Of a stretch of 64,000 nt of DNA, positions 1,436 through 56,409 are shown in pieces. Positions within the stretch are counted from its first letter, which is position 1, and every line of letters begins with the position of its first letter. The DNA comes from Mizuhopecten yessoensis (taxonomy: Eukaryota), in contig NW_018408551.1 in assembly GCF_002113885.1 (NCBI RefSeq), forward strand, positions 1,524,260 to 1,588,259, read 5' to 3'. A model generated the notes under the pieces. The model did no database searches. It worked only from the letters and a program-made list of their open reading frames with translations, and was not told the DNA's origin. Made by a program: the position numbers and the translations under genes.

Positions 1436-1704
1436 TTAATTAAGATTACTTACCAACTCGTCCACCAAATCGGAGAGTTTTTGAAGCTGTTCTGTGGAGA
1501 GATCTGGGTTGTCCAGTACCATTGGCATATCCATGGCATCCTCGGTATCCTGTACGATGGGAGGGTAAAAACTGTCCATGTCGCTATAACGGTCCGAACC
1601 TGAGACTGGGTCCTCACTCCTTAAAAGTAACTTTTTTAAGAAAAGTCCACTGTTTTCTCCACTGTTGGGTAATGCTGATGGGGGACCTGACCGTTTACCG
1701 TTAC
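1436..1704 (-). CDS. GGNamide / excitatory peptide precursor, last coding exon (N-GKR processing site + C-terminal associated peptide)
   Basis: ttgacag|GT AAC GGT AAA CGG = (G)NGKR, then SGPPSALPNS...DELVSNLN*. This is the 3' part of track ORF 1436..1780; the ORF's first 25 codons are intronic. Phase matches exon 2. Confidence 0.92.
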
Positions 1705-4700
1705 CTGTCAACATAAATATATTTCTCTTGTAAAAGACAATGCTAGTGTAAAAAAGAAGGTGTCGATCTCGTGTATGCAACTATACTTTGAACATTCGTA
1801 AAATCAAGGAAGATGTACATTTTTGAATCCGTATCAATGAAAAATTACCATATTAATAAAAAAACCTAAACAAATAACAATTAATCACTGCTTGTATACA
1901 AATCTTATTTTGATATCGATCAACGTATGACAAACGCAGAAGAAGCTACATTTAACCAATTATCAAATTGTAGTAATGTGGTGTTCTCGACGAATTTTCC
2001 ACAAAAAAATTGCGTTATTTGATTATGTTTCCCTGTTTCAATTCCAAACTACTTCCTACTGAACTCTGTAAAACCAATGTTGTGTTAAGACACAGAGACC
2101 AGTTTCGAATTGAGTTTAGAATATTAATGCATATAAATTTGAAATAGAATATTAAAATCGGGCTGATTACAGGAAGTTGTGACAATATATCGTGAATATT
2201 GCTTAATTGGCAGGAAACGAGTGACTATCATTGTGCTATAGGGATTCATTAACAAGAACATCAAAACAATTAAATTAACTGTTACGCTACTTATGACAGC
2301 CATGAAACACTATATTATTATGTTAACATGTTATCAGAATGATGGAGTGCTAAATTATAAAGATTTATAATATGTTGACGGTTGTGTCAAATGTTAACAT
2401 GATGTGTTCTAACGCCACAAGCATGTAGATTGTACACCGAATTATCTTCTGTATCTCTTGTGACTTACTATCCTATTTGAACGATGTTTAAAGTTATAAA
2501 AGAAATAAATGTATTCATTCTTTGAAGAGTGAGCCACTCTTTAAAAAAAATAGACATTATGTTGCTAGCTATTCGGAGTAAAAGAAATATTGACAAGGCT
2601 ATTTCGGAGTGCTTGCAAACATCATGAGATCATGAGGCATCCAGCGTTACATTTTATAGAATGAACAAAAGAGCCAGCATATGATATGTTGTGTTCAAAA
2701 GAGCACTAAACAATGCTAACCAGATCCTGACTAATTGCATGTGCTTGCTTTTATTCTAGTTCTCTAAAACCTCCCAGCATTTAAACTTGTACTTTGTAAC
2801 CATTTCGTCGTAAAGATCCAAAGGAAGGAAGGAATCGGATTGTCATAATGGACTTAATCTTGATATAAGTTCTATAAAATCTTAAATACTTATCCGGTTC
2901 TCATTAAAATATACGTCTCTGTGTCAACGTATTGGTTTGTAAGTGTTATCTAAAACTAGGAGCATTTCTAAATTGGTTCTTTTACATTGAAATTATACTA
3001 AAGACATTTTATATTTTACTCATACAAATATAACATTTATATTTATTTGCATAGAGCCTGTCCGTCTAATATTCTCATAAAAGTCATGTATAAGTGTTTT
3101 AATATGTCATTAACATGTTATTATCATGCTGAAGTTCATCGTATTACTAAAAGAGTTATACAAAATAAGTCTGATGTTTTCTTATCTTTTCATCTTTCTT
3201 CTTAACTTAATGGCCCCGAACATCACCGATTAGTCATATACGGTCAAAATGGCTGTTTCATGCAGGGTTATTAATTTCATGCCTACCGTATCTATTACCA
3301 AAGTGTTAAAGGTGCAATTACCAGTTTGTGTTTATGTGTTACCCTTATCTTAATGAAGCATAACATTTCTGAAATTCCTTCTTTAATGAAATTGACCTTT
3401 AAGAATCCGATATCATATTTTATTGCCAATGCTTCCAGCAGTCTTTTTAGAAGATAAGGATGACATTTATGTATTGTAATAGCATTTAACTAAGACTTGA
3501 AGACCGTTAATGTGACACTGGGGAATAGGGCTAATCTTTTCCAATGCTAGAGACCTCAAATGTATGCGTTATCACGCCCTTAAGACGAGGAGGACATTGC
3601 CTTAACATGGGATTATATCCGATCTGCTACAAAAAGCCTTTTGTATAGTATGGAATACCATATAAAGAGAAGCCCCGTGTTGAACAGATTGTTCCTTTCT
3701 CAATGATTATTAAGGGATCCAATGCTTTTCTGTACCAGCACCTTATATGTGTACTCTATCATTAGCATGGCACTATAGTTAATAAATGGCCTAGACAGAG
3801 AGACCTATAGTTTCCGGGTGAGATAGAACCCTAGCATCGCTAGTTCTAGGATGACAAATTTCAAAGGTGCTATCTCATGTATGACATGTGCGTGTGTTCT
3901 ATCAATGGGAAATACTAAAAGTAAATACGTCCAGAATTTCTTCTTTTTGAGATGTAAGGGTTTATTCCTCAAAAGTTTTGTTCTTGTGAAGTGTGAAGTT
4001 AAACTTTAAGTGGAACGTTTTCTTTTTTGAGTTGCAAGGATAAATACCTCAACAGATTTTGTCCCTGATGAGCTGTAGGGGAACATTTGTATATACCTCA
4101 CATGTTTCGAAACAAGTAAAACTAGAATTGACAAACTGTTGTAATCAATACACATTGTAGTATCGGAAAATCATGTATCGGAGCGGATATATTTGTTGAC
4201 AGTACAGATGTAAATACAGCTATATACTATAAAGTTATTGGATGGAACCATAGGTCAGTTTGTATTAATTCAGATTTTGCTTTTTTCCCTTTGTTTTAAA
4301 GTTAGTAAGAAAAAAACAATACAAGTCCGTAATCCAGTTGATACAATTATTTTACTTTCCCTTATTTAGAAATGTTGTTGAATAGTGTAGCGTCCTGAAC
4401 TCAAAGAAGGTTTACAATAATAAACAACCTTGCAGTAGTCTATTTGTAGTGTGATTACTCAGACTTGCCGATCCCAGACAGTATCGGTAAATGTGCGGGA
4501 ACTAACACGTCACCAAAGAGATGGATATGCCTATCACGTACGTAACACCGTGTTTAACGCCTAGTTAGATATTTACATATATACTGACACAGACTCTCGA
4601 GAAGAAAATAAAGATGTTCTTTTGTGTTAAAATGAAACGCTAAAAAGTATATAAAAACTAAACAATCACAATTGGGGTTTTAGATTATACACGTGGCTCA

Positions 4701-5029
4701 ATGTTAAATTATCTTCCCAGCATGCATCACATTGATGAGATTTGATTGAAAACTTGTAAGGTAGACAACATTGCGCTCCTACTGTGCCATTTGTCGTGAG
4801 ATCAATCAACAAGATATCAATAAAAAACGGTATACAATTTTTGTTTCGGGACACGCAGAGCAGAACTCAGAGCTGGAGGTATCGGAGGTCTCTTTGACTA
4901 ATTCTCCATTCAAATGAGAGAATAAATAGCAACCTGAGATAAAAAAAAAAACACAACACCATGGTACCCGATGATACCCGTCGATAAACATCTAAATTGC
5001 CGGTAAAGGAACAATGTTTTTTATTTGAT

Positions 5030-5370
5030 TATATAAGTGCACAGTTACATGTATTGACATGTATAATTAAATGTAAGATTTTTTGTTCAATTTAGCGAAC
5101 CTCTGGCGAGCTTAAAAGAAAGAATTTCGTGACGAGTTTTATAAATGTCATATGAAATAAAAATGACTATAAGATCCTTTTTATCACATACTCAAGATTT
5201 GGGGCATTTATTCGTGTAAAACGACAATTTTCATGCAATATTGAAATGTAAAAAAGCGCCATTTTGACTCCAGTGCGTAAGTCTGTGACGTCATGTACTT
5301 GCCCTAGGCGTGACGTCATGATTATACAGGGCTGATAGGTCATATTACATGGGTTAATACGCAAAAGCCT
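5030..5370. mobile_element. Dispersed non-autonomous repeat (MITE-like DNA element), copy 1
   Basis: Aligns by eye over ~300 bp with the reverse complement of 40385-40700 (e.g. gccattttgactccagtgc.taagtctgtgacgtcatg; gcatttattcgtgtaaaacg). No coding capacity. Confidence 0.75.
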
Positions 5371-8300
5371 ATTAACTGGATAGCACAGTACATTATGTGA
5401 TAAAAGTAAATACCGATTCATTGAATTGATATGCATTGACTTGACGTTCAATGCCATCCAAATAGGTATTGCCACCTTTAAAGATAATATTCTTTATCTT
5501 TTCACGAGAGTTTTTAAACTTCATTTCAATTTCTCCTTCGATTTGTCGGCTCCACATTTCATTTTCATGATAATCAAATTATGCGCGTTTTAATTTGCTC
5601 ATGCTCCTCGTTGACATACCAAGCTTTGGTTGTTTTATATGTTTAACGCGTTGTATACGAGTTTACGATCAGTGAATAATCACCTGATGAATCGGTAGTC
5701 CACGCTTAACGCCTCCTGAGGTTTTCTGTCGATCTAAACACGGTTCTTCTTACATTCGTCGTGATAATTGCTTAAGACTCTTAAGCTAGATATGTCGAAG
5801 AGATTTATACATGAGTAAAAAATACTTCGAACTTGGTTCTGTGTCCATAATATCTTGTGCGTCAAGCGTGAATCGCCCGTGGGAAGGGATAAATCTTTCT
5901 GAGCGTATTCACTGTTGTGAGGAACCATTCGAACGCGCCGCTTTGTCTGCAATGTCTTATAAATCTACAGTCAAATTTAAAACAAAAATACATAAGGGAG
6001 GCATAAAGGACCATTCATTTGTTCATCGTAGAGATTCCATTTGGGAAATGTTTTTTGGAGATTATATTTCATTGGATAGATGTTTGCGGTTCAACAACTT
6101 AAAATAACAAAGAGTCATTTTAAATAACAATTTGTATGTGTAAAGAGTAGACCCGTTCGTTGAGACGAGGGAAAACGAAAGACATGACAGAAACAGCGAG
6201 TATTATAAAATGAAATTAAAACCGATCACAACATTTTCACTAAACGAATGCCGAGGGCTCCGTTACCAAGGAAACATAGCAGATGAATATTACTGCTGAA
6301 ATTGCTGGTTACTTTTATGTTAAAAACAAATCTAAATGAACAAAAGAGGATGTAATTGAAAACGAATCATGAATACAAAACACGTATCTATGAAGGTTTT
6401 GAGATCTTGTATTTGATCGGATTGACCTCACAGAGTGATCACGAAGCTGAATAATGAACAAAAGAAGCAGCTTTCTGCAGATTCCTAAATAGCACAGTGT
6501 ATGTCCATACACGTTTACATGTCATGGAAATTGCACTTTTGTTCAAGAACAGCATAGTCTTGCCTAAAAACGTAAGCATTAAACTGCAGCGTGTATTTTT
6601 ATTTCCTGATGCATTACGAAAAACATGTTGTTCCCTCTCCTGGGTCCAGTACCTGCGCACAGGTAGTTCACACGGCGCGTATAGGTACGTGATATAGTCG
6701 TTGTGTTTAAGGATATATGCGGATGTGATCGGTAATTGGTCTATAAATATTTAAGGAGAGACTTGGTAAATAAATAGGTCCATAGTACAAAATCGATTGT
6801 GTACAAATATTCAACGTTTTGTCCCTAACGAATTAATATGAAACACTTTTTGATTTGTAACGGGTCGTAGATTCAACTTTTGCAATTTTTCAAACCTTTG
6901 ACTGCAAGCTAATGCAAATTTGTGGATATATTTCCATTATCCTCAGTGTGTGTATATGGGTGAGTTTGGACTCAATACATTTTCCGCGTAAAACTATGAC
7001 ATACATTGTACCTATCCACAAACAGTATACTTGAAATGAAACCAAGTCCGTCGACATAGCTGTGACACGTTCAATACCAACGTAGCATGCCATAATCATC
7101 CATACAAGCGTCTGATTGACACTAAATATTTGTTTTAGGTTAAATATAATCACTTCCTTTTTCCTAACTTCCGGTATCTCGCCATGATCATATTATTCAC
7201 TGAATAATATGTCCGTATTTTTTTTATCTGACTCTAACAACTACCCAGCATGTAAGCCATGTCCATCTTGTTTAGTAATAATTGATCGGTGGTATCAAAG
7301 AAAGCTACAAGGAATCAAATTACCGCTACACAGGCAAAAATTAGAAACAAAATAATGTGTCAATGGCGCAATGTTTAACTCACGAATATCTCTACACTAT
7401 AGAGTGTGCAAATAATTACCGCTAATTGTATTGTGTTTACTTCGTCCACCAATTAGCAGTAGGGTCATCACAAATACGGGTGTCTAGTAAGACGTCAGCT
7501 ACTTAAAATCAATTGTAATAATAACGTGAAAAAAGGATAAGAATCGAACTCGCAACCATTAATATATCTTTTATCTAGGCTACTGCGCTTCTAGATATGT
7601 TAAACAAGTAGCTAGGCCACTTTCATGTATGGGAACTGATAATATTTCCCCTTTTGTTTATGTGTAACCTGGTACTATGTTCGGAACGTTGTGTGTGTTC
7701 TGTTGATGTTGATTTCACTAATCGATGTTATTGAATTGATTTTGGATCATGGAGTTTCTTTTAGATTGAATTTTACTACATTTCAAAAAACAAATTATAC
7801 AAAACCCCCATGATGTATAGCTTTAACTAACCATGATCCTAATACTTGATTATTTAATTTAAAGCATTACTAGGATCAATTGTTCCAAAGGAAACATTTT
7901 TCGGTACTAGCACTTGCTATTTGTCATTGTTATTAAAATATCAATTAAATCACATATGTATTAACCGAACTATTTTCTGACTTCACTCGTTGTCGTTAAT
8001 CCTCACCGCTGATACGTTGTACGTTACAATTGCTTTTAATTTCATATCATTGTTAAGACGTTATGGGAGGAATTCTTTGAAATGCTTGTTTGCAAATGTC
8101 TGCTTGTCCATGGTGACAAAGATTGTAGCATCACTATCCATCAATGGGGAAGTTCCATTACGACTATTTGGTAGTTAAGTAATAAAATAGCAAAGTCCTT
8201 GATTATATGTGTCTTCGTTACTACAAAACACTACCGTAGAAACAAACTGTTAGGCCCGCAAACCCGGTCACGATTCGAGTAAAGGTCATCCGGAATATAC

Positions 8301-9179
8301 TTTAGTCCCTTTTTTATCGCTTCCTGAACTATTTCTGTTAATTACCTTATTAATGCTATAATTAAGGTATTGTAGATACGCATAATTGATACACCTAGTG
8401 TGGGGTTAGGCAAGGCGACTGTCACACCGAAAGGAGATATAACCTATGCCCATGTTATTGCAATGTACCTAGCAACAATGAAATGTCCTATGTTTTAATC
8501 GGGCGGACATGTATATATAGACGCGGTGATATAAGAATAATAATCAGTGCTTACCATGGTAGGCGTAATTTAAGTAAATAAATTACATGTAATATTGATA
8601 ATTTTTGGTTTATCGAGGAAGGGTTATTTTCAGAAGAAATCAAATTGAAGCTACTCACTCCTTTTTTAATAAAATTAAAATTAACAAATCACCTTTTGGC
8701 TAGGCAGTTATTTTTATATAAACAATGGTTACTTAGGGGTTTTAACATTTATTTCAGAAACGATTTCGAGGCAACCTTTTGAAGTCAAATAATTTCTGTA
8801 ATCATTTTCAAAGTTAACCTGATCCAGTTGTTTTAGGTATGTGTTTTAAATCGCTCTGATATCTAAAACATTATTTGTTCTTCCCCTTATTTTCAATCAA
8901 TTATATTATTTCTGTTCAGTTTTATATTATGACATATATTAGTTTTAGTATGTTTGAATTGTTTTGATATAACAAGTTTAACTTGAAACCTAGTGACCTA
9001 CCAAACATATCGGTCTATACAAACCATTCCAGAAACAAAAAAATCGTGTTGATTCATTAAAAAACCAAGAGAACACCGAAATGTCAGCAAAACCATAATA
9101 AAAACTCAAATTCGATAGAAGTAAGGGGAAAATGATAAAAGGGAAAATGTGCATGAAGATTATCGGAAAAGGCAAGGAG

Positions 9180-10280
9180 GAAGAGTAAGTGTTCCGTAAA
9201 GGTAAGAGTCTGCTTCAAGAACGCCATCATATTAATTCAGATCACGTCCAAGTAATGTCACGTCCTCACGTAGATAAAATGAGTAGTGATAGTAATACCA
9301 CTAGGCACAACTATGAACGTTATTAAAAAAACATCGACTGACATATCAAATATGAAATGGCACACTTTCCTATGTGATCATTATGGCGAATTCAAGCCTG
9401 TCTTCATTAAACATAACAATGTTGTACGTTTGTTCGACATCTATCACGGAAGTCTTGAATATCGAATCAACTTTGACATGTACAAACCGTAGTTTTTGGA
9501 AGCAGTTATATCACTATCAAGAAAGGGAAGGTTCAGTTTAGGAAAGTTGAAACCGTCCCGCTAACTTTACAGCTTCATACATCATATGTAGCAAAATGTC
9601 CCTGTTGTTTACGTTGTAAGTGCAGATCGCGAAAAGCTGCTTAGGTAGAACAGTCTAAAGTGTCCTTGATTTCAAGCTCAGGAGGGTATATCTGAATGTG
9701 AATTAAAAGGGTTTGTAAAGGTGTTTGTTATTAGTCCTGATAAGCTCACCAATAAATGCAGCCTTATGTGAACACAAAACACAAGTTGGCCTGAAAAGGG
9801 ACACAGTGTGTTCCAATAAAAATGTCTACTGTCTGTTGGAAAACCGTCTACCGAACTCAATACAGACATTGTCAACCAGAAACTCAATCATTCTCATAAT
9901 TCTGTCATCTAGGTATTTCATTTTCGTCTTTGTTGTGATTTTTACAAAATATGCTCCAAAATATCTTTTTATATATATTAGGTAAGACGCTCTCATAATA
10001 AGGCCTCGGAGGCGTTTCTTCCGCTTGATGTGAGGTATGTTAGTGTAAAGTGTCGAAAAGGCAACAGGTTTGATAAAAGAAACATATTTCAGAAGAAGAT
10101 GTCTTAAATTGAACAAAAGATCTTTTGAATGCTTTAAAATCCACATTCCCTTTATTCCATTTCCCGAGTATACAGTGTCAAAATACGACTGTAATCCTGA
10201 TTTAATGGTAATAAAAATGGTAGATAGGAGTTTAGACAATGGCTTGCTTGAACAACTTAAAAGCCAGCTTATACAATATT
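9180..10280 (-). mobile_element. Decayed Penelope-like retroelement reverse transcriptase (Naiad/Chlamys-type)
   Basis: Frameshifted minus-strand motifs in the expected order: MWILKHSKDLL, FSTLYTNIPH, MIEFLVDNVCIEFG, IFIGTHCVP (cf. GIPMGTNCAP), IYPPELEIKDT, RDGFNFPKLNLPFLDSDI, LIRYSR, then the shared 3' non-coding motif. Confidence 0.85.
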
Positions 10281-13200
10281 GTTATAAGGATTCTAGTTAA
10301 GCTCTGGAATCTAACAAATACAATATAAAGTGAGTAACAGATGAACAGATAGTAACGTCACGTATGTGATTCTGTATATGATACACGCTGCATCTGCGTG
10401 TAACACTACCGACTATTTCATGAAGATAAAATGTTTTATGTACATGGACTAGACATAAACTAAGGTAATGTATCAATTAAAACATCCAGCGTTTGCAACT
10501 AAACTCGAGCATGTGATTGACGCCGCTTTTTTGATTAGTTTGGCTTGTTCTGACACATGCGTATAACTAACCTATATGCACTTTCCCGAAAGAAAATGAT
10601 ACGGGGAATGGTCATGATTTATTGTCGTCTAACAAGGCTTGGCCTGGAGATGGATGTCAAAGGTATAGCTATAAATCAAAGGTGTGACGCGCAATTAGGA
10701 ACGCAGTAAATAAAACCCCTTTGGGAGAGAGACTGATAAAAAATTATAGATCTTAAGTGAGATCTTTTGTTCTCAGCATGCACAAGCCATCAATGAGTTC
10801 ATGAAAGTTTTGTGTGCCAGGGTTCATTTAATTGCTCAATGACTTCATAGAAACTTGTATAAGGAAAACACTTTTCTAAAACCTCTGTTACACAGTCAAA
10901 CTCTAGAATTGTCCGGTGGTCTCTGGATAGGCCTGGGATAGGACCAGTATCTAGATCTTTGTTGCATGTATTGATTGAAGACATTTTCTCTCGCGAATGT
11001 AAGCTTGCCACGCGATTAACTCGTTCACCCATTTCACGATTACAAAGACACGTTGTGACCCTCTCACAGATTGTATCGCTTTTCAGAAAATAAAGATATT
11101 TCTTTTCAGTGATGTTATCCTTTCTTATTCTTCCACTTGAACATCCACTACAGCGTCTACATAGGTTTCTGACTAAAGAGCACCTGTAATGTAATATGGG
11201 GTAAGGAGATGACCGGATTGTAAACTAACTAGAAAGACGGCGATGTATACTTCCTTTAAACACACAACGATTGATATAACAATGGCTCTGTCGGCGTAAA
11301 TGGAGTTGATGAATGTTCCAAAAATTGGGATTGCATCTGAAATAAAATAGTCGGAGTGCTTCTGATCGTATACAGCTTGTGGGTCTAGTGTACATTGGAT
11401 ACCATATTATCGATAGATGTGTCCAGATCAAACGTTCGATTGTTGTCCAAACTTTCAAAATATCGATTATATCTACCGATGTATTAATTTATTGATAACG
11501 AGAGTGATTTAAGTCAGCCAAGTTTTGATGTGTCTGATCCCACGCCTGATAAGACCTGCAAGTGGTCATGAACTCACAATTCCTCATCAGGCGGAAGTGG
11601 TTAGGCGGAAAGAGAACTGGTTATTAAGACAGAACACCGGTGGACGATATCTTCCCTCCGACGTATTTAATAACGTAAGGTAATTTCTAGTATAATGATG
11701 ATAATATCAAGTCTAACAAAGCAAGATACACACTTACAGATGTAGGTAAAATAGTCGTATAGAAAGTCAATGGTATAGCTAATGATTGCCCTTCATTCTG
11801 ACGGTGTATTCGGTAGTAATACGTCTTTGGCAAGCAACATATTCTATGGTGCGCGATCCATACAGAATATGTTCGTTACCAACTGCGTTCATACTACCGA
11901 ATTTGCCGTCAAAATAAAGGCCGAACCTTATTTTATTATCATAAAAATTGTTCAAATGCTATACAAAGAAAACAACAGTCGAAGCGGGTTGTTAGAATAA
12001 TATAGTTCCAGTGAATCTACATCGATGTATGGGTAAATTTAGAAACTACGCAGTGAACAATTTTTCTTCTTTTCATCGTTTTTTAAAATAAATTAATATT
12101 ACAAGTAGCACTTTTAGTACAACATTTGTATTCATTTGTATTTGTCGTTCTGTAAACGCATTGGCACACTGTTCTGGTAGAGACGCGGTCGAACGTCGGA
12201 AAAGGTAGCCGTCATTGTTTACTTTATCGGCAAAGAATTCTGAATGTGCATCCATGAAAAAAAGAAGTTTGCCAGCATCCCTTTGTTGTATGATCAGACG
12301 TAATTGATCCCGAATATGTTCCATGTTCTAGATGTTAAAGGAACCAAACCATGACTGTAATTGCACAGAAGCGAGAACGGCGCCATATTTGAAGAAGGTT
12401 TCAATCCGCCGAGCCTTTTAACGTTTATGTATATGTAGTCAGAGTTTACCCGGCTGAAGAAGGGAGAGATGTAATTTATAATCGCTTAGGTAACTAGGAA
12501 CATTTTGTGCTCGTATCACCAAAAAAAACATAAGCCGAAACAAAAAAATGGATCAACTTGGAGTTTCATTAATAATTATAATAATTTGGTTATTGGTGAA
12601 TCAGTCGATTCTTGGTTTTGATAGATTTGTCATTTGTTTGATCGCACTACACTCCCAATTACCGTGCGTACATCGTACATGCATCGTGCGCTCATCGTCT
12701 GCATATATCGCATACACACGTGTTACCTCCATATGTGCGATATGGTAAGATCGGTTGATGTTAAGGATTTTTTTTTTCCGAGAGGCTAGATTGAAATGAG
12801 GGTACATCATGCGTTTAATATCCGACCGGTATGTTTTGCACTTCCATGATTTGATACAGCTAGACCTGGTCTGGGTTAATTATGTATGTGACGCTCTACG
12901 TGGAAATTTTACGCCTACTTCATGGCTAACTAGATACACGAAATGTATTCGTCACCTGGTAATTACTAGGTAATTATTATAACGGGTGAGATGTAGGGGT
13001 GCTTTGTTTTAATTGCATCTGCGTGTACAGTATGTACATGTGTATGACCGTTTACGTTTATCTACACACGTTTCGACTGAAGTAGTTTCTAAACAATTTT
13101 GTTATTTGTACACTTTGTTCGTGCTATATTCATCACTGTTAAACACATAGATAACCATATAAATCTGGCTAAATTGGCAAACTACTTAAATTATGAAAGA

Positions 13201-14404: not shown

Positions 14405-14446
14405 CTCCTAAACATGCGTGAATAGACCATCTCCCTCTGCATTTGC
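14405..14446 (-). CDS. GGNamide / excitatory peptide precursor, coding exon 2 (42-bp micro-exon, mature peptide core)
   Basis: ctttcttttgacag|GC AAA TGC AGA GGG AGA TGG TCT ATT CAC GCA TGT TTA GGA G|gtgagt = (G)KCRGRWSIHACLG(G). Matches the KCxGxWxIHACxGGN motif of annelid/mollusc GGNG excitatory peptides. Confidence 0.95.
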
Positions 14447-16297: not shown

Positions 16298-16467
16298 TGA
16301 TATATGTACTATGATATATGTACTATGATATATGTACTATGATATATGTACTATGATATATGTACTATGATATATGTACTATGATATATGTACTATGATA
16401 TATGTACTATGATATATGTACTATGATATATGTACTATGATATATGTACTATGATATATGTACTATG
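16298..16467. repeat. 14-bp minisatellite (atgatatatgtact)n, ~12 copies
   Basis: Perfect tandem array visible directly. Confidence 0.95.
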
Positions 16468-16689
16468 CATGCAGGTTTGCAGATAAACTTCACCATTTTG
16501 TATATTATATACATATCAAGTAAAAAAGCAAAAAACATAATACAATATTGAAAGAATATTCAGAATGCATATGTTTATCAATTATTTGTATCGCCATTAA
16601 CAAATCAATTCGGCATGCTACTTGATTTGGAGTATGACTATGACAGTACCAAAATATATAGCCTCTAAGCAAGCTACGTAAAACGGGGT

Positions 16690-17395
16690 TTTGAGAGTGG
16701 TATACATTAACATCAAACATAGTCCCCCAGAAAACTCCATAGAGCGGGCATTGAGAGTGGGATAATTTACAATATAATCCCTCTGAAACTACACAGCAGT
16801 GTAATGTGAGTGGGATACTTTACAATATAATCCCTCAGGAAACTGCATGCAGCAAAGCATATAGTGGGATTCTTTATAATATAATCCCTTAGCAAACTAC
16901 ACAGAACAGTGTATTGTGAGTGGAATACTTTACAATATAATCCCCAAGGAAACTACATACAGCAAAGCATGGAGTGGGATTATTTGCAATATAATCACTA
17001 AGGAAGCTACATGTACATAGAACAGGGTATTGAAAGTGGGAAAGTTCACAAAATTGAAACTCAGGAAACTACATACAACAAAGCATAGGGTGGGATTCTT
17101 TTCAATAATACCCCAAGGAAACTACGCAAAACAGTGTATTGAGACAGGGATACTTTACAATATGTCTTTCAGGAAACTACATAGAGCATGGTATTGAGAA
17201 GGAGAAACTTACAATAAACTATCCCGGACGTAAAAGCATAGAGTGAGATGCTTTACATATTATTCCCTCAAGAAACTACACAGAGCAGGGCATCGTTTTT
17301 TATGCTTAACAATATACAGTATATTGTCCTTCAGGAAACAGGTATTGAGAGTGAGATATTTTAAAATAAAAGTCCTCTGGAAACTATTTGAGCAG
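16690..17395. repeat. Degenerate ~50-55-bp tandem repeat
   Basis: Recurring gagtgggatactttacaatataatccc...ggaaactaca...gtatt units, about a dozen diverged copies. Confidence 0.85.
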
Positions 17396-17883
17396 AACAA
17401 GGAGACGATGCTGCCAACGCCAAACTATGGTAGATGGAGAACATTAAGAAACTGCGTTTATATACATATACAGTATATTATTGAATTTACGAGACGTCAA
17501 AACACAGAAAGCCCACATAGAGAGTATTTTTTTAAATGCTGTTATAAAATTGCAATGTCTTTTGTAAACACTGATATCGCATTAACTTGTTCGGGGATTG
17601 TGTATGATGTGGGCGTAGGATATTGTTTTGCAGCTACAAGGGCTAATTGGGTAAATTGTGGTAATGTGTAAAACCTCTATCAATAGTCTCAACCTTTGTT
17701 ATGTGTAGCACAGACAACGAAATAAGGTTATTGCTATCAGAGCAAATCTTATTTCATATTAAACTGAATCAAAAAGGTTAGCAAAATCGATAATACTGGT
17801 GTGTGTGTGTGCGAGAGAGAGAAAGAGAGGGGGGATGGAACGGTTTGGAATGGGATGAGGGACGTGCAGGGGGGGGGGGGGGG

Positions 17884-17933
17884 NNNNNNNNNNNNNNNNN
17901 NNNNNNNNNNNNNNNNNNNNNNNNNNNNNNNNN
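17884..17933. other. Assembly gap (50 N) within a poly-G tract
   Basis: Ns flanked by G runs, with GT/GA microsatellite just upstream. Confidence 0.99.
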
Positions 17934-20900
17934 GGGGGGGGGTAATGTAGAGATAGACTGAACAAAAACACAAGCAGACTCGGCACGTGTCAAAATAATT
18001 TCATACAAAAAAGTGAAATTTATCAAATTAATGGTTATGTTTTAAGGCAGCGATCAAGGGGTGCGGCCATTAAAAATGTCCATGCCCTGGACATGTGAAG
18101 GGTTTTATGTCAGTGTGCAAAAACCTTTCTATATATAAATGCGTCATTGAATTAAATAAGAAGATAGTACTGTTCTCTCGGTAGTTTGGTTAGAGCCGTC
18201 AGCATCCTAACGATATTTTACGATTCGCCTGAGAACCTGAGGCACATTTCATTCAATCAACATCCATTGTTTGCAATGCACAATCTACTGGCGGTCTTAA
18301 TAAAGTATCAGGAGTCTCGCTAACTCCTGATGTCTGACCGACCCAACTCCAAGTATACAGAAAGCTTATCGGATGAATACACTTTTTTCATTATTTCTCC
18401 ATCGAATATAGACAAATATCGTCGGGAATGCAATTTTAGGATAGCGACCCAATCATTGATCAGAACCACAGATAAGTGTGCATCACAACCATGTGTAAGA
18501 TACAGCTGTATCATAGAACTGATCTTTATCAGTTTAATATATGGCTGACAGGAGTTTCCTGTTTCCTAGAACATAATATTGGCCACATAGAATAGCAACC
18601 CTGTAAATAATATAGATTAAAACAGATCATTTTATAGAAAAACTAATGGGTTTATTTTCTGTCCAAAATAATTGCTTTTAATCTAATCAATTGTTGATAT
18701 AATCGTCGTGTTTAAAACTTATTTAAAACTTAAGAGATGGTAAAAGTAGTCAGTCTTCCCTAACCGGGTCTTGTCCTAACAGTGTTTGGATGTGGATATT
18801 ATCGGTTGGGTCTAACATCAGAAGCCACTTGTTACCTCAAGTGAGACGTGCATACTTGTAAGTTAGAGGAAGCAGACAAGACGAGCCACGGGCAAAATGT
18901 ATGTATATATCATAAGTCTTACAAAAGTACATTGTAGGACAAGGAAATATCTTCATGTACATTTACCATGGTTCAATTCGACATAAAACACTACCAGCGT
19001 TCAGTATTTTGCTGCCTGGTTATTGCACCTTAAGAATTTTACGCTGTCTGTCCCTTTGCTACTGTATGACCCCCTCAAAGATTCTCCGCGATTTATACCT
19101 CTGAAAACATTATCAATTTGCTTTTCATTTTGTTTCACTATATATCGTACGGGTTAGTTTCAGGAAAGGTGTATATTTATCAAAATTAAGTATGACGTTT
19201 CAACAGCATTGAAGACTGGCCTACAGTTCGCGGCCTGAAATGAAATTCGATGACAGTGAAGCGTTTTTACTGAGAGGACACATTATCATATTTAAATAAA
19301 CGGTATTAATTTTTATTTGGTAAAAAAATGGTGAAACAATAATCAATTTTTAAATAAGACCGCCAATGTGTCCCTTTCCTTGATGCTATCAAATCCGCCT
19401 TAGATCCGACATAATGCTTTATAAGGCGAGTACAAATGCAATTCATTTTTAAAACAGTCATACGATAACATTGGTGAGACGCCGGCATATCTTGTTGAAT
19501 ATTTCCAGACTGGAACTACAGATATGGTACAGAGTGTGTATAACCAGTCCGTAATAGATTGATACTAACATGTTAAGCGCACGTGATACTGTCACAACGA
19601 CCCGATAGTTTCTCGCCTTCCACGCATCCGGAACGCATTGACTGTACAACATCACGAAAGCCTAAAATCTGTAGAGCAGAAAACGGAAGAAATCCTGACT
19701 AGACAAAACACATTTGAATTCACTTTCATTTGTTGTTTTGAAGCTATTTTATATAAACAAAGCGGACGTTTGCATGTCCGTGTCTTTTATACTGAAATAG
19801 TATTTCCTGAAGATAAAAGCAGAATGAAATTAAGGTGAGATGGAAACAGATCTACGACTATTGTCAGTGGGTGGTTATTTACGTCCGGATAGACGACGCC
19901 GTGTTGCCATTGTCTACATATCTCATAGCGGTACTTGTCGCTGATGGTAACACCCATTATTAGACTCGACATAAATGTGTGTCCATTGTAATGACAGAGA
20001 GAAGAAAATATGTAAAGGTTCCCTTTCATGACTGCTTGATAAACGTTTTGTTAAAAGCAAATAACAGTGAATACAAATTATTATCAAAGCAATCCCACAC
20101 ATCGCTTACTGCTTAATAAGCGTTGGAGTGGAACACTTTTTGTATGGTACATATGTCATTGGTTAATAGCCCCTTGAGGAAGCGCATTTCATACAGAGCT
20201 TAGTTAAGTACTTTACTTTTGGTATTAACATAGTGCACCTATATGGTCTCAGAGTAAATTTTCTTATTCAGGTTTTGAAAGTTTGCTATTTCTCCTCGAC
20301 TGTGTACAGATTATATAATACATATGTAGTATACTCGGGTATTCACAAAATAGTAAAGAAAGTATTTTGCATTATTCAACCAGTACTTTCATCTTCAACC
20401 AAACTGCAATTCAATAAGGAAAGCACTATATTTGGGTATATAAGGTCTACTAATGCTCATTACAATCTGACCTACCTCTCACTCACTCCGTTGATAGGCT
20501 AAGCTATCCCAACATTCTTTTGTTACAAACATAGACATTGACTAGGAGTTTACAGTGTTGTACATGCATCATGCTGGTGAAACATGACCCGTTGTACACA
20601 ATGACGTTTAGGAACACTCGACATGAGCGAGATAATACCTGCAACGAAACCGCATGCATTCACAATTACCATTTACAGATCTGTAGTGGTCATGTGGTGA
20701 AAAAACCTTCCAAATCGGTAGAAAATATTTGACGGGGAGGTACGAAGCCTAAAATACACCAGCACCCCCATATATTGTCGCCGACCTATGTCTATTTTAT
20801 TTCTAGATTCAATTTGAGTTTCATTATTAACTCTAACCAGTAGGTTCCACCAGTAAACGCAATGGTAACCCGAATGCATAACATCTAAGTAAGTTGCAGT

Positions 20901-21164
20901 GTAACAAATTGCCTTCGTAATATCCCTGTAACCATTTCAAGTCCAATGCGCAACATTCTCTATCGTTTGACCATTGCAAGCATTTTATGTACACTTCATT
21001 GGATGGACGTTTATCAGTCATAACCAATTTGTGATTAATTTACAATAATATACTCAGTATTTTTTGTTTGATTGAATTTTACAAAGATTTAAGGAATATA
21101 GTCAAAAGCTCTGAGTGTTTTTTTGTCGTGGTCAATCATTTTCAGGAATTTACACGGTAACTAC

Positions 21165-21262
21165 GTCTGGTTATCAGGCAAATAAGTCTGTTATCAGGCA
21201 AATAAGTCTGGTTATCAGGCAAATAAGTCTGGTTATCAGGCAAATAAGTCTGGTTATCAGGC
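21165..21262. repeat. 21-bp minisatellite (gtctggttatcaggcaaataa), ~4.5 copies
   Basis: Tandem copies; explains the VIRQISL repeats in ORF 21115..21330. Confidence 0.9.
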
Positions 21263-22719
21263 TCATTAACTCGGCTTATTCTGATGTTCTATATCGGGTT
21301 ATGATAACTTATTTGTCTCATGATAATTAAGTCGACCTTTCATGATCATTTAAGTCAACTAATCGTAAATGGTCGATTTACGAAATATTCATCAAGATAA
21401 ACCGACTTAGTTACATTTCTGTATCTTTAACTCAATTAAAATGATGGTTAAATTGAATGATAATTTCATTTGGTTTTAATACTCATGATATAGCGGCTAA
21501 ATTATTATTTATCAAATTTAGTTATCGTTATAAGTCGACGAATAATAAATTGCAGGCATAATTATTATCGACTTGAATCTACTTGTGGAAGAATGTGCAT
21601 CCATTAGAATAAATTGAAGTCGATTTAATGCGCAGGAATTGTATTGTATTGTTTTGAAAACTCATCCATTAATAATAAGCCTTTGCATTGGATGTTTGCG
21701 GGGCAGCAATGCTCGATAATATTGTTTACAGAGCTACTTAAGTGTTTGTATTTATGTTGAATGTACCCGTCTTCTCTATTGTTCTACATTGTACTTGTCT
21801 GCGGATCGATAACCATAGTTGTCTCATTTGATTTGTATTTCATATCGATCTATCTGTAAATATTTGACGGACAAACAAAGGTACCCCTGTGCTGTGTACG
21901 CCTTTTGTATGACACGAATCATTGCCCACCAGAGGAAAAACAAACCCTGTGCTTACTACTTTCATAGTAAGAAATCAAAGAGAGTTGGCAAATGTTCTGT
22001 TAGCTTAACACATTGCTTTCTTAATTTTCGAAATGAATACTCAATAAATTAGTGTGTTTTTTTAAAGTAATACGTCTTTGGTTTCTGGCGATCAGTTGGA
22101 GTTTTGGAACATACAATGTTAATAGTGTTTTCTCCATACGCCTTCTTGATAAAAAGTTGCGTTGTACAAAAAGTAAACTTATTGACGTTTATAATGAATA
22201 GGTATGTAACGAGGTAATAACCAAATCAGTTCTAGATAGCAGTGTGAAACCCTGACATAATCAAATATGATATACAATACTCTATTACAATTGTACATCA
22301 AGTGTAATTAACTAAACATACTGAAATATTGACACCATATGTCGCAATATGTGTATTGGACCTTGTCAGCTCTCTGTTATTGTTTACATTTTAAGAGAAT
22401 AAACCAAACAAATCTTGTAGATTGAACAAAATTGAGGACTGTTAAGTAACATATTACTGTAATGTTCGAGGTACTTCGATATGATAAACATTAAAGTAAT
22501 AATATATCTTTACAATATTACGAACTTTTGATATCAAGTTTCATTGTCATAATTAAAGACACATCATTTTCATTAGTGAAATATGGCTTTCCAAAAATTA
22601 TCCCTCCTAAGTAAATGGTTCAAATTATTATGAGCCTTAACATCGCATGCAATTGGCTAAAAAAATCGTCAGTTAATCGTATCATCACCAATGAGTGACT
22701 GGCAACACACCTGTTAGAA

Positions 22720-23935
22720 AACATCAACCGTCGGTTACTGGTAAATGTAAATCATCAACCGTCAGAAACTGGTCAATGAAAATCATCAACCGTCAATAAC
22801 TGGTCAATGTAAAACTGTAACCGCTGTAACTGGTCAAAGTAAATCATCAATTGTCAGTATCCGGTCAATGCAAATCATCAACCGTCAGTATCCGGTCAAA
22901 GTAAATCATCAACCGTCAATAACTGGTCGATGCAAAACTTTAACCGCTGTAACTGGTCAAAGTAAATCATCAATTGTCAGTATCCGGTCAATGCAAATCA
23001 TCAACAGTCAGTATCGGGTCAAAGTAAATCATCAACCGTCAAAAACTGGTCGATGTAAATCTTTAACCGCTTTAACTGGTCAAAGTAAATCATCAAACGT
23101 CAATGCAAATCATCAACCGTCAGTATCCAGTCAATGTAAATCATCAACCGTCAGAAACTGGTCGATGTATATCTTTAACCGCTGTAACTGGTCAAAGTAA
23201 ATCATCAAACGTCAGTATCCGGTCAATGCAAATCATCAACCGTCCGTAGCTAGTCAATGTAAATCAGCAGCCGTCAGTATCCGGTCGATGTGAAACTTTA
23301 ACCGCTGTAACTGGGCAATGCAAATCATCAACCGTCAGTATCCGGTCAAAGCAAATCAAAAACCGTCAGTAGCTAGTCAATGTAAATCATCAACCGTTAG
23401 TAGCTAGTCAATGTAAATCATCAACCGTCAGTAGCTAGTCAATGCAAATCATCAACCGTCAGTAACTGGTAGATGTTAAGCATCAACCGTCAGACACTGG
23501 TCAATGTAAATCATCAACCGTCAGAAACTGGTCAATGCAAATCATCAACCGTCAGTAGCTAGTCAATGTAAATCATCAACCGTCAGTAACTGGTAGATGT
23601 TAAGCATCAACCGTCAGAAACTGGTAGATGTTAAGCATCAACCGTCAGTAACTGGTAGATTTTAAGCATCAACCGTCAGTAACTTGTAGATGTTAATCAT
23701 CAACCGTCAGTAACTTGTCAATGTGCATATCAACCGTCAGTAGCTAGTCAATTTAAATCATCAACCGTCAGTAACTAGTCAATGTACATATCAACCGTCA
23801 GTAGCTGGTCAATGTAAGTCTACAATCGTAAGTATCTGGCCAATGTTAATCATCAACCGTCAGTAATTGGTGAATGTAAATCATCAGTCATCAATAACTG
23901 GTCAATGTTATTATCAACCGTCAGTAACTGGCTAC
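22720..23935. repeat. 31-bp satellite (aactggtcaatgtaaatcatcaaccgtcagt), ~39 copies, decaying to ~24300
   Basis: Period 31 (e.g. 23401 to 23432). A 123-bp higher-order unit is present in the 5' half. Confidence 0.95.
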
Positions 23936-24714
23936 TTTACCCGTCAATAATTTGCTCTTGAAAATGACATGTAACATCCCTGCGTAACTGGTTATTGTTC
24001 ATCAACAATTGCCAGTTATGACCAATTGTGATTTTGCACCCAATAGTCAGTAACTGATTACCATTACTTATATTCTTCAGGGACTTACTACTGATTGCCA
24101 TTAGTTACAATTTACTGTTTATTAACATCAATCAGTAACTGGCTCCCGTATATGAAAATAAATAAGTTATTAGTTACCTTAAATCATCACCCACCGTTAC
24201 TAGCTATTGTTAATACCCAGCCGTCAGTAACTGACTATTGTCAATTACCCACTGTTATTAACTGGCTACCACATCCGTCAGGATTTTTCTGCAGTAAATC
24301 AACACCTGTCACTAATTTCATAACGGGCTTCAGCACCTGTCTGTAACTATGACAGTAGTATGGGACTTCCATTGTTCAAAGGTTCAGGTCCAATTTAAAC
24401 ATTTTCCAACCTTGACTGATTCATTAACAATGTAGATTCAGAGAGCATGAGTGACAGCTATTCCATGAGAAATGAACTTGAAAGAACCTGTATTAGTTAA
24501 AAAGAATATTTATAAATGTATATCCATTACTGTAGTATATTATGGTTGAGTTCTGCCTGGTACAAAATAATAAAGAACACCCACCATGTAATTGACAATA
24601 AATAAATAACATCAGTGATAGAGCATAGTAAGCTAAAAGCAGTGTTAAATACACACAATGACATACCAGACACTAAGCACCATATGTGTGTGCTTAAATG
24701 ACTACTTGTTTTGT

Positions 24715-25500
24715 GGTAGTGAATAGTGCGTCAATTATCAAAGGACACATTTATTTTAGATAATAGCCAGCGTGTCTATCATAACATACATACTCACACT
24801 TGCTTTGTAGTAATGACTAGTGTGGCTTTTACCACAACAAACAAACAAATGTAGGTATTACTACTGTGACAATTATCACAAGGGACACAGTTTTTAATTG
24901 TTAGTGCAATTATCAAAGACAAACTGTATGTTGAATAATAGCTGGTGTGTCAATTATCACAACAGACACAAACTTCCTTTGTGGTAACTGCTAGTGCGTC
25001 AATTATAGAATCAATTATCACAACAGAAATGTCTTTACTTTGTAGTAATTACTAGTGCGTCAGTTATCACAGGAAAAAGTAATGTTGAATAATAGCTGGC
25101 GTGTCAATTATCACAACAAACTAGCACTGCCTTTGTAGTAATAACTAGTGCGTCAATTATCACATGACAACCATGTTGAACAATAGCTAGCGTGTCAATT
25201 ATCAAAAAAGACAAACACTTCCTTTGTAGTTCTAACTAGTGCGTCAATTATCAAGCAATAATCACAAGAGAAACATTTTCCTTTTGTAGAAATTACTATC
25301 TGACAACAGTGTTATAGTAATGAATATTGCGCCAATATACAGAAAAGAAACACTTTGTTTTGTAGTTATAACTAGGATGCCAATTATCACAGCAGACAAA
25401 CAATATATTTGGTGTAGTAATGATTAGTATGTCACCTATGAAAGCAGACAGACATTCTATTTTATAATATAACTATGACTAACTAAGTCATTTATCACAA
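24715..25500. repeat. Degenerate tandem repeat (tagtgcgtcaattatcacaa...ctttgtagtaat), unit ~45-50 bp
   Basis: gtcaattatca core recurs more than 10 times at roughly regular spacing. Confidence 0.8.
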
Positions 25501-28500
25501 TAGGCAAACACGTAAAGTTTTGAAATCAAAATTGTTGTTACCATCATTATCTGTTGCTGCTGATTCATCACTTGTATTAATTTGTTAACACTGAACTATA
25601 TCTTCATTTCAGATGAAACATTTACACGTATCAACCATTCATTTTGTTCAGCAAGAGTCATTTAACTTAACGATAAAAAAGATCAAAACTGCCAGACATG
25701 CAGTACTTATACATACACAGATCAAGCATGAAACAATTTTGATTTCAATATAAAGGACTGTCCTCGATAAGTAGTGCTACATAGTGTTAATACTAAACTG
25801 TGATTAGACTTTTCTAACTACCAACATACATGATTAGCATACTTGTTTTATATTGTGCTAAACACTAACACATCGGCATTGCATCTACTTGCATGGGTAT
25901 CTGATTTTGATTACATTTTGATTAAGATACATACAGTGGCATGCAGTAAACTAAAAATGGTCATCAACACAGTGTCAGCAAAGTATTTCAGCAAACCTGG
26001 ACTATCTTATCTAAGGTCGATTGCTGGTAAGGGGTGATATGATGACTAGTTTTGTAAACAGGGTCAAGTTGTATGAGTAAAATCAATGAATTTAGATATT
26101 TACGCACTTGAAGATAACTACGTCCTGGTTTGCTGAAAACTCAAATATGGCCAAACACATACGCTGGTATTACACTGTGTTTAACTTGTAGCGTTATCAG
26201 TGCTAAGTAGTTGGCATTTACGTACATATTATTCTGTGATTTGTCAACATATTTCGTGATATATACTTTCAAATAATTGAGTATTACATGACTACTCTGT
26301 GAATGTCTGCACGATATTGAGAAATACTACACTGTAAGTATGCATATGAATATATAGATATGTGAGTGCATGGTTATATACTAATCGTAGCTAAACATAT
26401 ATCTATCTACTTTTCTATGCGTTTGTTCTAGCAGATTCATACCTCTCCAGCCTGAAAAAATTAAATAGATAATGTAAAATAATTAAATAAAAAGCATAAA
26501 TCCAATACAAAGACATAGAATATTAAAGCATTTATATAAAACTTGATAAAATATATACAAAATAGAATGGGTAATGAGGAACTGCTATCTCGGAAATATG
26601 CTTCTCAGTTTCGTTGATACATAAATTATGCTAATGGACGGAACTAAACAACGTAGCTTAAGAAGTCAGATAAGGAAAAAAGGGTGACATCATCACTGAC
26701 GTCATTTTTCTAGGCGTCAATGAAGACTTAAGATCCATTACATTTCCTTCCTTTAATGATAATAAAGATAAGAAGCTACTGATGACTAATCATAACACTG
26801 CCTATGACGGTATTCGACTATTTCAAATTAGTATGTAAATGTTTATTGCAAAACTTAATTTGAACGTTGAATGATATCATTTGCATATCTATCTCATTAA
26901 CATATCTAACCAAAAAACCACTACTGATATTAGGATAGTAACAGGAACTCCGTATTATATGCAACGCAAGTGAGAAATCGAAACGATCAAAGGAGAAGAT
27001 TCGTGTTTCGTATAGCAATTCACGGAATAAAGGCACCATTGACAATTTATCGATTTCTTTTTACCTAATTTTAAGATAAAACTTGTGTTAACACTGATCC
27101 TGGTATTGTCCTCCTGACATATCACTCCCCGCGTACCTGACTGAATGCCTTAAATGGCATTTACCTTAAGCCGTGTAGATGCCTGATAAAACAGACAGAA
27201 ATCAATTTCACCCGTCAGCAAAAGCCGTACTATCTATCAGGAAGCAACGAGAATCATTTACATGATATCGGCCATTTCATAAATAAAGATAATATTCAGG
27301 TTTACTCGACCGTCGGTATTGTTTCCTGAGGTGGGATATGTTTTTTCTTAGCTGGTCGGAACGACGCCTTGTGTGTTAATTCTATACCTGCTATGCCGAT
27401 ACTCTCTCCTTCATAAGTCTACGAACAACTTCACACATCTGTTCCCCTTTATGTGATTGAAATTCATATTGAATTCATCAAGAGGAATTATTCCACCACA
27501 GCGTTATAACAGTACTTTCTATAATTGAATCATGTAGGTTATTTGAGATGACGAAATTGTCCCAACCAATAATGGGCTAAACATGCATTTTATAATATGA
27601 GGTATAAAGCACCGCTACTAAACGCGATCATTTCCAAAACTAGAACGTATATCCTCAGTATTCGACGCCTTTGACATACGTCTTACATTATTTGAATATG
27701 TCTGTCCTATTTGATGTTCATGTATGACACCAGTTTGATGTCTCTGTAAATATGTTAGAGAGCACCATCGAGCTATTCCTCTGTAAATATGTTAGAGAGC
27801 ACCATCGAGGTATTCCTTTGTAAAAACGACTCAAAGTAACCGTTTGGAACATGATCATATAATCATAGCAATATCAGAACCTAAACGCGCAGTTATTCGG
27901 AGTTTTCCCAAAGGAAACACGTCTTTCTTTTCAATTTCAATTTCCAATAGCGTCTTGCGATTTGGATACTAATGGATTTCCTATTTCTATTGGAGAATCG
28001 ACACGTTTGGCTGACAACTTGATATGATATGTACTGTAATAGAAAACTGAATCTTTGGTGACAGAACAGATGTATTTAGAACGGTAGCACTTTTTTGGTA
28101 TATGTTTGTAGACAATAAACACTATGCTGCCGTACCGATGATCAAATAACTACACATGTATTTCATTAATCTACATGTTAACGACATCTAATTTACAATG
28201 ATGCACGCATTAATATGTCATATATCTAAAAGACATTGATACAATCACGTTAAAGCAGCTTCAATGCGTGCTATCTTTTATACCTAACCTTACTTATAAT
28301 TACGTCAATGAAAACCAATTATCACCTTTTTTAATGAATACGAAAGTGTGAAAAATAGCGCGACTATTCTAAAATACTATAGATTAAACTCCGCGGGGTT
28401 GTTCTATCTAAAACAATCATTGCTTTGACATATCGACCTCATCAAATGCATAGTATTTAAGTATATACAATACTCCATTGGAATGCTTTTACTGCGGGTG

Positions 28501-29052
28501 ACGATAGGCATCTTAGTTGGAATTTCGACTATATCGTGTCTGAATTAACGCGCCTCTGTATAATCAAACCTTACGTCGTGGAATCTAAGTATTGTTAATT
28601 TTATTGTTCTTTCATTGCCTTCTCAATCGACGAGGCCATACAGAAGTAATTTACTTTGGCAAATTACTTATCAATACATTTCTTTATATCTAAGCATAGC
28701 TAGTAGTTTAGTTATACATGTCTTTGTTATAGTTAACAATCTAATTTTTGCTGATTCTATATGATGTAATGACAGTGTGCATGGTTATCATACACGAAAC
28801 TACCCATATAATATAATTAAATGATAGTTTTATTGATAGTCTTTTGTGAAATACCATCTTACTTATCATTATTTATAATATTCCACAGTTAACAAAATTC
28901 TGTTAATACGACCAATTTCTTGAATATGTGCGACTATAGTTGACACTCTCTCCCATCAACGTTTTCAAGAACAGGAAAACATATCCAAAATACAAAAATA
29001 AAAACTCTACTTTCCAAAATTAAAACATGCAATGTTACATTTCAAAACTTAC

Positions 29053-29131
29053 CTGCTGATACTGATGAAAAATTAACGGATAGATATACACAACATGTCG
29101 CAGCAAATAACCAGATACACCTGTGGTTCAT
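29053..29131 (-). CDS. GGNamide / excitatory peptide (CCHamide-family) precursor, coding exon 1 (signal peptide)
   Basis: Minus strand ATG at 29131 reads MNHRCIWLFAATCCVYLSVNFSSVSA + G, then donor gtaagt (phase 1). Hydrophobic core and a V-S-A end fit a signal peptide. Splices in frame to exon 2. Confidence 0.85.
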
Positions 29132-56405: not shown

Positions 56406-56409
56406 ATAC

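What the first reader, a model, noticed from the sequence alone, without database searches (positions are those of the whole stretch)
1436..29131. Complete hidden GGNamide/excitatory-peptide (CCHamide-family) neuropeptide gene over 27.7 kb
Seen: three minus-strand exons (79, 42, 269 bp) separated by 14,606- and 12,700-bp GT-AG phase-1 introns join into MNHRCIWLFAATCCVYLSVNFSSVSA-GKCRGRWSIHACLGGN-GKR-SGPP...SNLN (129 aa). Known: annelid/mollusc excitatory peptides have the form KCxGxWAIHACxGGN(G/amide) with one disulfide and are orthologous to arthropod CCHamides. Inference: the product is cyclic GKCRGRWSIHACLGGN-NH2. The family is known, but ORF-based annotation misses two of the three exons.
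Basis: partly seen in the sequence, partly recalled or inferred. Interest (0 to 1): 0.8.

Follow-up and report, generated by a model that had tools for sequence, protein, structure and literature searches.

The report
Known scallop GGNamide neuropeptide gene

Summary
They encode a signal peptide followed by GKCRGRWSIHACLGGN-GKR.

The gene is neither hidden nor complete as described:
- The window is contig C5224 of a 987.6-Mb, 82,659-contig genome.
- Translated exon by exon, it is identical to XP_021369390.1 = AXN93490.1, named "GGNamide", from Mizuhopecten (Patinopecten) yessoensis (RefSeq LOC110460672).
- The peptide GKCRGRWSIHACLGGNamide was published by Zhang et al. 2018 (PMC5996578).

- Exon 3 ends at 1454, at a GTAAGT donor. 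"VSNLN*" is read-through into intron 3.
- A fourth coding exon (IYRKKLRSLSDEAGLV*) lies 10,045 bp further on, 8.6 kb outside the window.
- Transcript contigs from four studies cover only 1454-1706. They run on into exon 2 on one side and exon 4 on the other.
- The real precursor has 140 aa and the gene spans about 39.6 kb.

An optional 9-nt microexon (26443-26451, GCTGGAGAG) inserts Trp-Arg-Gly after the signal peptide (RefSeq isoform X1, 143 aa). It is identical, with its splice sites, in four scallop genomes. I saw no RNA containing it.

The N gap (17884-17933) is intronic and does not matter here. Verdict: an ordinary, already known gene.

The parts
29053..29131 (-). Coding part of exon 1: ATG at 29131, signal peptide MNHRCIWLFAATCCVYLSVNFSSVSA plus the first base of the Gly codon; donor GTAAGT at 29052-29047.
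   Evidence: identical to residues 1-26 of P0005 and P0006. An in-frame stop lies 12 nt upstream.
29132..29467 (-). 5' UTR, continuous with exon 1. The upper limit is approximate. No separate upstream non-coding exon is indicated.
   Evidence: Argopecten irradians mRNA contigs L012 and L013 align collinearly to window 29467-29049. The lengths of the laid contigs imply about 370-460 nt ahead of exon 2 (this is arithmetic, the letters were not seen).
26443..26451 (-). Optional 9-nt microexon GCTGGAGAG (phase 1 to phase 1). [quoted passage not shown]
   Evidence: The pattern AG-GNTGGMGNG-GT occurs once in the window, with 0.00 expected by chance. Its context is ttttttcag|GCTGGAGAG|gtatga. It accounts for residues 28-30 of P0006. 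It is identical, with AG/GT borders, about 2.5 kb after exon 1 in P. maximus, A. irradians and Y. balloti. I did not see inclusion in RNA directly.
17884..17933 (.). Assembly gap (N), inside intron 1 and not part of any exon.
   Evidence: Flanking conserved islands are collinear with P. maximus.
14405..14446 (-). Exon 2: (G)KCRGRWSIHACLG(G), the core of the peptide with both cysteines.
   Evidence: The loose end of the transcript contigs next to exon 3 is the reverse complement of ...AGGGAGATGGTCTATTCACGCATGTTTAGG, which is exon 2. The core motif with its donor is unique in the whole genome at up to 1 mismatch.
1454..1704 (-). True exon 3: (G)NGKR, which carries the amidation and cleavage signals, followed by the acidic C-terminal propeptide up to ...SDLVDEL. 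It ends in phase 0 at donor GTAAGT (1453-1448).
   Evidence: Contigs of four runs from four studies cover 1454-1706 only. The two extra bases, 1705-1706, are the AG shared by the end of exon 2 and the end of the intron.
1436..1453 (-). It is the first 18 bases of intron 3, not coding in the transcripts seen.
   Evidence: VSNLN is absent from P0005 and P0006.

Best explanation
The locus is the single-copy GGNamide (excitatory peptide / CCHamide-type) neuropeptide precursor gene of the Yesso scallop Mizuhopecten (Patinopecten) yessoensis, RefSeq LOC110460672.

Structure:
- It has four constitutive coding exons on the minus strand plus one optional 9-nt microexon, and spans about 39.6 kb.
- Only exons 1-3 and the microexon lie in the window.
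- Exon 4 (IYRKKLRSLSDEAGLV, the stop codon and a 3' UTR of about 1.5 kb) starts at contig position C5224:1515667, 8.6 kb before the window begins.

Inferred processing of the 140-aa precursor, from the rules of the family:
- signal-peptide cleavage after SVSA;
- prohormone-convertase cleavage at KR;
- carboxypeptidase trimming, then amidation using the Gly;
- one Cys3-Cys12 disulfide.
The product is GKCRGRWSIHACLGGN-NH2, which would act on an EP/CCHamide-type GPCR.

The microexon isoform would give the N-terminally extended GWRGKCRGRWSIHACLGGN-NH2, or shift signal-peptide cleavage.
For: - Exons and splice sites read directly from the sequence.
- Every exon translation is an exact substring of P0005 and P0006.
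- P0005 = AXN93490.1 'GGNamide'. The peptide and the precursor are published (PMC5996578 main text; Fig. S1 and Table S1, MH045222).
- Exon 4 has a good acceptor, ttttgtattttacag|ATATAC.
- Transcript contigs from four studies show the exon 2/3 and 3/4 junctions and no intron sequence.
- A. irradians mRNA contigs map as four blocks onto the same four exons.
- The same four exons and the microexon are present in P. maximus, A. irradians and Y. balloti.
- It is single copy: the exon-2 motif is unique in the genome. The extra hits on C82190 and C82221 are 98.8-99.6% identical haplotigs.
- Family features come from PMC6617912 and PMC12969411.
Against: - The laid runs are only guessed to be RNA. The intron-less contigs themselves argue that they are, and no intron-less genomic copy was found.
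- The exon 1/2 junction was not seen in reads here. It rests on the deposited mRNA-derived protein, RefSeq, and A. irradians transcript contigs.
- Amidation, the disulfide and receptor activation are inferred.
- In the plain text of Fig. S1 only a propeptide fragment (PVSGSDRYSDMDSFYPPIVQD) besides the peptide is marked. I found no text match for the mature peptide in the mass-spectrometry table that is held.
- Inclusion of the microexon in RNA was not observed directly.
- Pfam has no model that matches.
Confidence: 0.95

Rival explanations
1. One reading: an intron-3-retaining or read-through transcript that yields a 129-aa precursor ending VSNLN. The mature peptide would be unchanged.
For: The frame stays open for only five codons after the donor and then meets TAA, so a retained intron would give exactly this protein. 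Contigs drop rare variants, so cannot exclude a minor form.
Against: - All four contigs from four studies leave the genome exactly at 1454 and continue with exon 4.
- The donor is a consensus GTAAGT.
- Deposited proteins of four scallop species all end IYRKKLRSLS[D/N]EAGLV.
- Exon 4 is 87-98% conserved at the DNA level.
Confidence: 0.04
2. There are two or more GGNamide genes in this genome: paralogues on contigs C82190 and C82221.
For: A protein search of the whole genome hits exon 3 on C82190 and exon 1 on C82221 as well as on C5224.
Against: - The two small contigs (5,642 and 5,804 bp) align end to end with the window, introns included, at 98.8-99.6% identity. C82190 continues at 100% into the sequence just before the window. 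This is the pattern of uncollapsed alleles (haplotigs).
- The exon-2 motif occurs once in the genome.
- The literature lists one precursor for this species.
Confidence: 0.03

Closest known systems
GGNamide precursor of Mizuhopecten/Patinopecten yessoensis (GenBank MH045222 / AXN93490.1; RefSeq XP_021369390.1 and XP_021369389.1, LOC110460672; Zhang et al. 2018, PMC5996578)
   Same: It is the same gene.
   Different: Nothing differs in the sequence.
GGNamide orthologues of other scallops (Pecten maximus XP_033740560/1, Ylistrum balloti XP_060067767, Argopecten irradians XP_069134608)
   Same: Same four-exon layout with introns of roughly 9-15 kb. The mature peptide is identical. The 9-nt microexon is identical and sits about 2.5 kb after exon 1.
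   Different: 86-92% identity in the propeptide part. The A. irradians annotation lists only the 140-aa form.
Trochozoan excitatory peptides / GGNG peptides and arthropod CCHamides (Thiel et al. 2019, PMC6617912; Aplysia EP/CCHa 2026, PMC12969411)
   Same: Two cysteines eight residues apart, a C-terminal GGN-Gly-KR amidation motif, and a single peptide copy directly after the signal peptide.
   Different: The optional Trp-Arg-Gly insertion at the border between signal peptide and peptide is not mentioned in the papers I read. Receptor pairing has not been tested in scallops.

Membership tests
EP / GGNamide / CCHamide-type neuropeptide precursors | Two cysteines in the mature peptide, eight residues apart in lophotrochozoans | tested here: met
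   C-RGRWSIHA-C in exon 2. The criterion comes from PMC12969411 and PMC6617912.
EP / GGNamide / CCHamide-type neuropeptide precursors | C-terminal GGN followed by a Gly amidation donor and a dibasic cleavage site | tested here: met
   ...LGGN-G-KR spans the exon 2/3 junction. The junction is confirmed by the transcript contigs. Amidation itself was not tested.
EP / GGNamide / CCHamide-type neuropeptide precursors | A single peptide copy directly after the signal peptide | tested here: met
   - The first 26 residues form a hydrophobic signal-like segment (mean Kyte-Doolittle hydropathy 2.05 for residues 5-19; V-S-A at positions -3 to -1).
- The peptide starts at residue 27 and there is no second copy.
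- SignalP was not available. Fig. S1 of PMC5996578 starts the peptide at the same Gly.
- Isoform X1 places three extra residues at this border.
EP / GGNamide / CCHamide-type neuropeptide precursors | Sequence identity to a deposited family member | tested here: met
   100% identity, exon by exon, to AXN93490.1 'GGNamide'.
EP / GGNamide / CCHamide-type neuropeptide precursors | The peptide activates an EP/CCHamide-type GPCR | not testable with these tools
   Needs a receptor assay. Shown for other species in the literature cited in PMC6617912 and PMC12969411.
EP / GGNamide / CCHamide-type neuropeptide precursors | Match to a curated profile (Pfam) | tested here: inconclusive
   P0005 matches no Pfam family at E <= 0.01. 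I know of no Pfam model for this short-peptide family, so the blank says nothing.

The most novel reading that the evidence does not exclude
The 9-nt microexon (26443-26451) is a regulated, functional alternative exon conserved across Pectinidae. It switches the product between GKCRGRWSIHACLGGNamide and an N-terminally extended GWRGKCRGRWSIHACLGGNamide, or alters signal-peptide cleavage. This would be a splice-generated second ligand from a single-copy EP/CCHamide gene, where some other molluscs use two genes. It is annotated as isoform X1 in RefSeq but, as far as I could find, is not discussed in the literature.
Probability: 0.35. Interest if true: 0.35.

Novelty: already known. Interest (0 to 1): 0.08.

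Why it matters
It matters little as a discovery. The gene, its peptide and its family assignment were published in 2018 and are in RefSeq and GenBank.

The check is useful as calibration. A reader working from raw sequence can recover a split neuropeptide gene with exons of 42-79 bp across introns of 12-15 kb. The same reader can be misled at the 3' end when an in-frame stop follows a donor site closely.

The only part that may deserve a small follow-up is the conserved 9-nt microexon at the border between signal peptide and peptide. It could diversify the ligand of a brain-gut peptide system (EP/CCHamide, related to GRP/NMB/endothelin) that regulates feeding in Aplysia.

Tried and rejected
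- Exon 4 was not found inside the window. It was found after fetching the 20 kb before the window.
- The look-up of encoding contigs for the species' own proteins P0005 and P0006 returned nothing (the tool says records of the window's own genome may be left out). I therefore could not obtain a full transcript contig of this species or check microexon inclusion that way.
- Pfam scans of P0005 and of the six longest window ORFs gave nothing, apart from a sub-threshold RNase H hit.
- A literature search for microexons in neuropeptide precursors returned only two unrelated schistosome papers.
- The paralogue reading of contigs C82190 and C82221 was rejected.
- The weak hits L006 and L007 (E 0.05-0.6, with stops) were treated as chance. 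The exon-2 motif search found no second copy.
- No search was made with a joined (spliced) model typed or built by me. Searches used exon references and stored protein ids. The exons were joined only inside a script, to check the reading frame.
- I ran no further search on relatives outside scallops, because the family assignment was not open.

Full report
**Observation.**
The three minus-strand exons are present exactly as described:
- 29053-29131: ATG at 29131, 26 codons plus one base, donor CAG|GTAAGT.
- 14405-14446: acceptor ...CTTTTGACAG|, donor GAG|GTGAGT.
- 1436-1704: acceptor ...ATGTTGACAG|.

Both introns are phase 1. An in-frame stop lies 12 nt upstream of the ATG.

It touches no exon, and conserved islands on both sides keep the order seen in Pecten maximus. 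It affects only the stated intron length. I did not fill it or look it up.

**What it is.**
- A word search with the exon-3 translation, by reference, found two scallop protein clusters.
- The members of the first cluster include XP_021369390.1 = AXN93490.1, which UniProt names 'GGNamide', from Mizuhopecten yessoensis (140 aa). They also include XP_021369389.1 (isoform X1, 143 aa). Both sit on a contig of 1,834,233 bp.
- The window itself is G000:C5224:1524260-1588259, a contig of 1,834,233 bp in a genome of 987,588,634 bp in 82,659 contigs.
- Each exon translation is an exact substring of these proteins.
- Zhang et al. 2018 (PMC5996578) list GGNamide (GKCRGRWSIHACLGGNamide) among the neuropeptides of this scallop. 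They print the precursor in Fig. S1, and in Table S1 they give MH045222 and its match to XP_021369390.
- Later reviews of the family cite it.
- So the gene is neither hidden nor new. The original genome gene set seems to have missed the gene, while RefSeq did not.

**The 3' end is wrong.**
- All deposited scallop precursors end ...SDLVDEL-IYRKKLRSLS[D/N]EAGLV, not ...DEL-VSNLN.
- In the window, DEL ends at 1454 and is followed by GTAAGT (1453-1448).
- The missing exon is not in the window.
- It lies in the sequence before the window, at L011:1408-1358. This is C5224:1515667-1515617, or window coordinate -8592 to -8642. It sits behind ...tttttgtattttacag| and encodes IYRKKLRSLSDEAGLV plus a stop.
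- Intron 3 is 10,045 bp.

**RNA evidence.**
Exon 3 is held by 20 public runs of the same organism from 13 studies. I laid the contigs of four runs from four studies on window 1-4000.
- Each run gives one contig of 1.6-2.1 kb that matches only 1454-1706, with no differences.
- On the low side, each contig runs on with the reverse complement of ATATACCGGAAGAAGCTCCGCTCTCTGAGT, which is the start of exon 4.
- On the high side, each runs on with the reverse complement of AGGGAGATGGTCTATTCACGCATGTTTAGG, which is exon 2. The two extra matched bases, 1705-1706, are the AG shared by the end of exon 2 and the end of the intron.
No contig enters 1436-1453.

Caveats: the runs are only guessed to be RNA, but intron-less contigs, together with the absence of any intron-less genomic copy, argue for cDNA. 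Contigs cannot exclude a rare read-through form.

I did not see the exon 1/2 junction in reads. It rests on three things:
- the mRNA-derived deposit;
- RefSeq;
- two Argopecten irradians transcript contigs (L012, L013). These map as four blocks onto window 29467-29049, 14449-14403 and 1705-1451, and then onto L011:1409 downwards into L008:9900.

This also indicates that the 5' UTR is continuous with exon 1. The last exon is about 1.5 kb long, with AATAAA signals at window -10078 and -10133. The gene therefore spans about 39.6 kb, not 27.7 kb.

**The microexon.**
- Isoform X1 carries Trp-Arg-Gly between the signal peptide and GKC.
- The pattern AG-GNTGGMGNG-GT occurs once in the window, with 0.00 expected by chance, at 26441-26453 on the minus strand.
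- Its context is ttttttcag|GCTGGAGAG|gtatga. The 9-nt exon 26443-26451 keeps phase 1 and explains X1 exactly.
- The same nine bases, with AG/GT borders, lie about 2.5 kb after exon 1 in P. maximus, A. irradians and Ylistrum balloti.
- The surrounding 100-150 bp are 74-83% conserved. Several other collinear intronic islands are about as conserved, so the island alone proves nothing.
- The only transcript-derived protein in the clusters (P0007, A. irradians) lacks the insert.
- That three RefSeq annotations list X1 is not independent evidence, since annotations can be carried over between species.
- Whether the exon is used, and how much, therefore remains open.

**Copy number.**
- The genome-wide protein search also hit exon 3 on C82190 and exon 1 on C82221.
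- These contigs (5,642 and 5,804 bp) align to the window along their whole length, introns included, at 98.8-99.6% identity. C82190 continues at 100% into L011. They are uncollapsed alleles.
- The exon-2 core with its donor (W-x-I-H-A-C-x-G-G|GT) occurs once in the genome at up to one mismatch, and the reversed control gives 0.
- This agrees with the single precursor listed for the species.

**Mechanism (inferred from family rules, not tested here).**
- Signal-peptide cleavage after SVSA. The segment has a hydrophobic core (mean hydropathy 2.05) and V-S-A at positions -3 to -1.
- Convertase cleavage at KR, then amidation using the preceding Gly.
- A disulfide between the two cysteines, which lie eight residues apart.

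The product is GKCRGRWSIHACLGGN-NH2. By homology it would be a ligand of an EP/CCHamide-type GPCR. These peptides excite gut muscle in other trochozoans and regulate satiation in Aplysia.

The defining features listed by Thiel et al. 2019 are all met in the sequence: two cysteines, an amidated C-terminus, and a single copy directly after the signal peptide. Pfam has no matching model.

**Verdict.**
The family and the peptide are right. 'Hidden', 'complete' and the C-terminus are wrong. The gene is already known, so interest is low.

Noticed in passing
G000 contigs C82190 (L009, 5,642 bp) and C82221 (L010, 5,804 bp), against window 1-5221 and 26184-31916: Two small contigs duplicate parts of this locus, introns included, at 98.8-99.6% identity. 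They are probably uncollapsed haplotigs of the assembly. They make exon 1 and exon 3 look duplicated in genome-wide searches.
   Followed up: yes
window 27311-26995, 21885-21717, 10985-10590 and 6546-6256; also -1483..-1619, -3071..-3284, -6942..-7504 and -7921..-8406 (outside the window, in L011): Collinear conserved non-coding islands (about 70-82% identity) lie inside the three long introns and are shared with P. maximus, A. irradians and Y. balloti. They may be regulatory elements or further unannotated small exons.
   Followed up: partly
window 56399-57560, minus strand: Overlapping ORFs of 293 and 311 aa. The longer one gives only a sub-threshold RNase H hit (E 0.008, 16.8 bits against a cutoff of 25.8). 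It is possibly a decayed retroelement.
   Followed up: partly
L012:189-671 and L013:238-720 (A. irradians transcript contigs): The automatic ORF call (P0007, 160 aa) starts at an upstream in-frame ATG, 20 codons before the conserved MNHRC start. In M. yessoensis an in-frame stop 12 nt upstream of the ATG excludes such an extension.
   Followed up: partly
PMC5996578, Table S1: [quoted passage not shown] The original genome gene set apparently missed these split, short-exon neuropeptide genes, although RefSeq has them.
   Followed up: no
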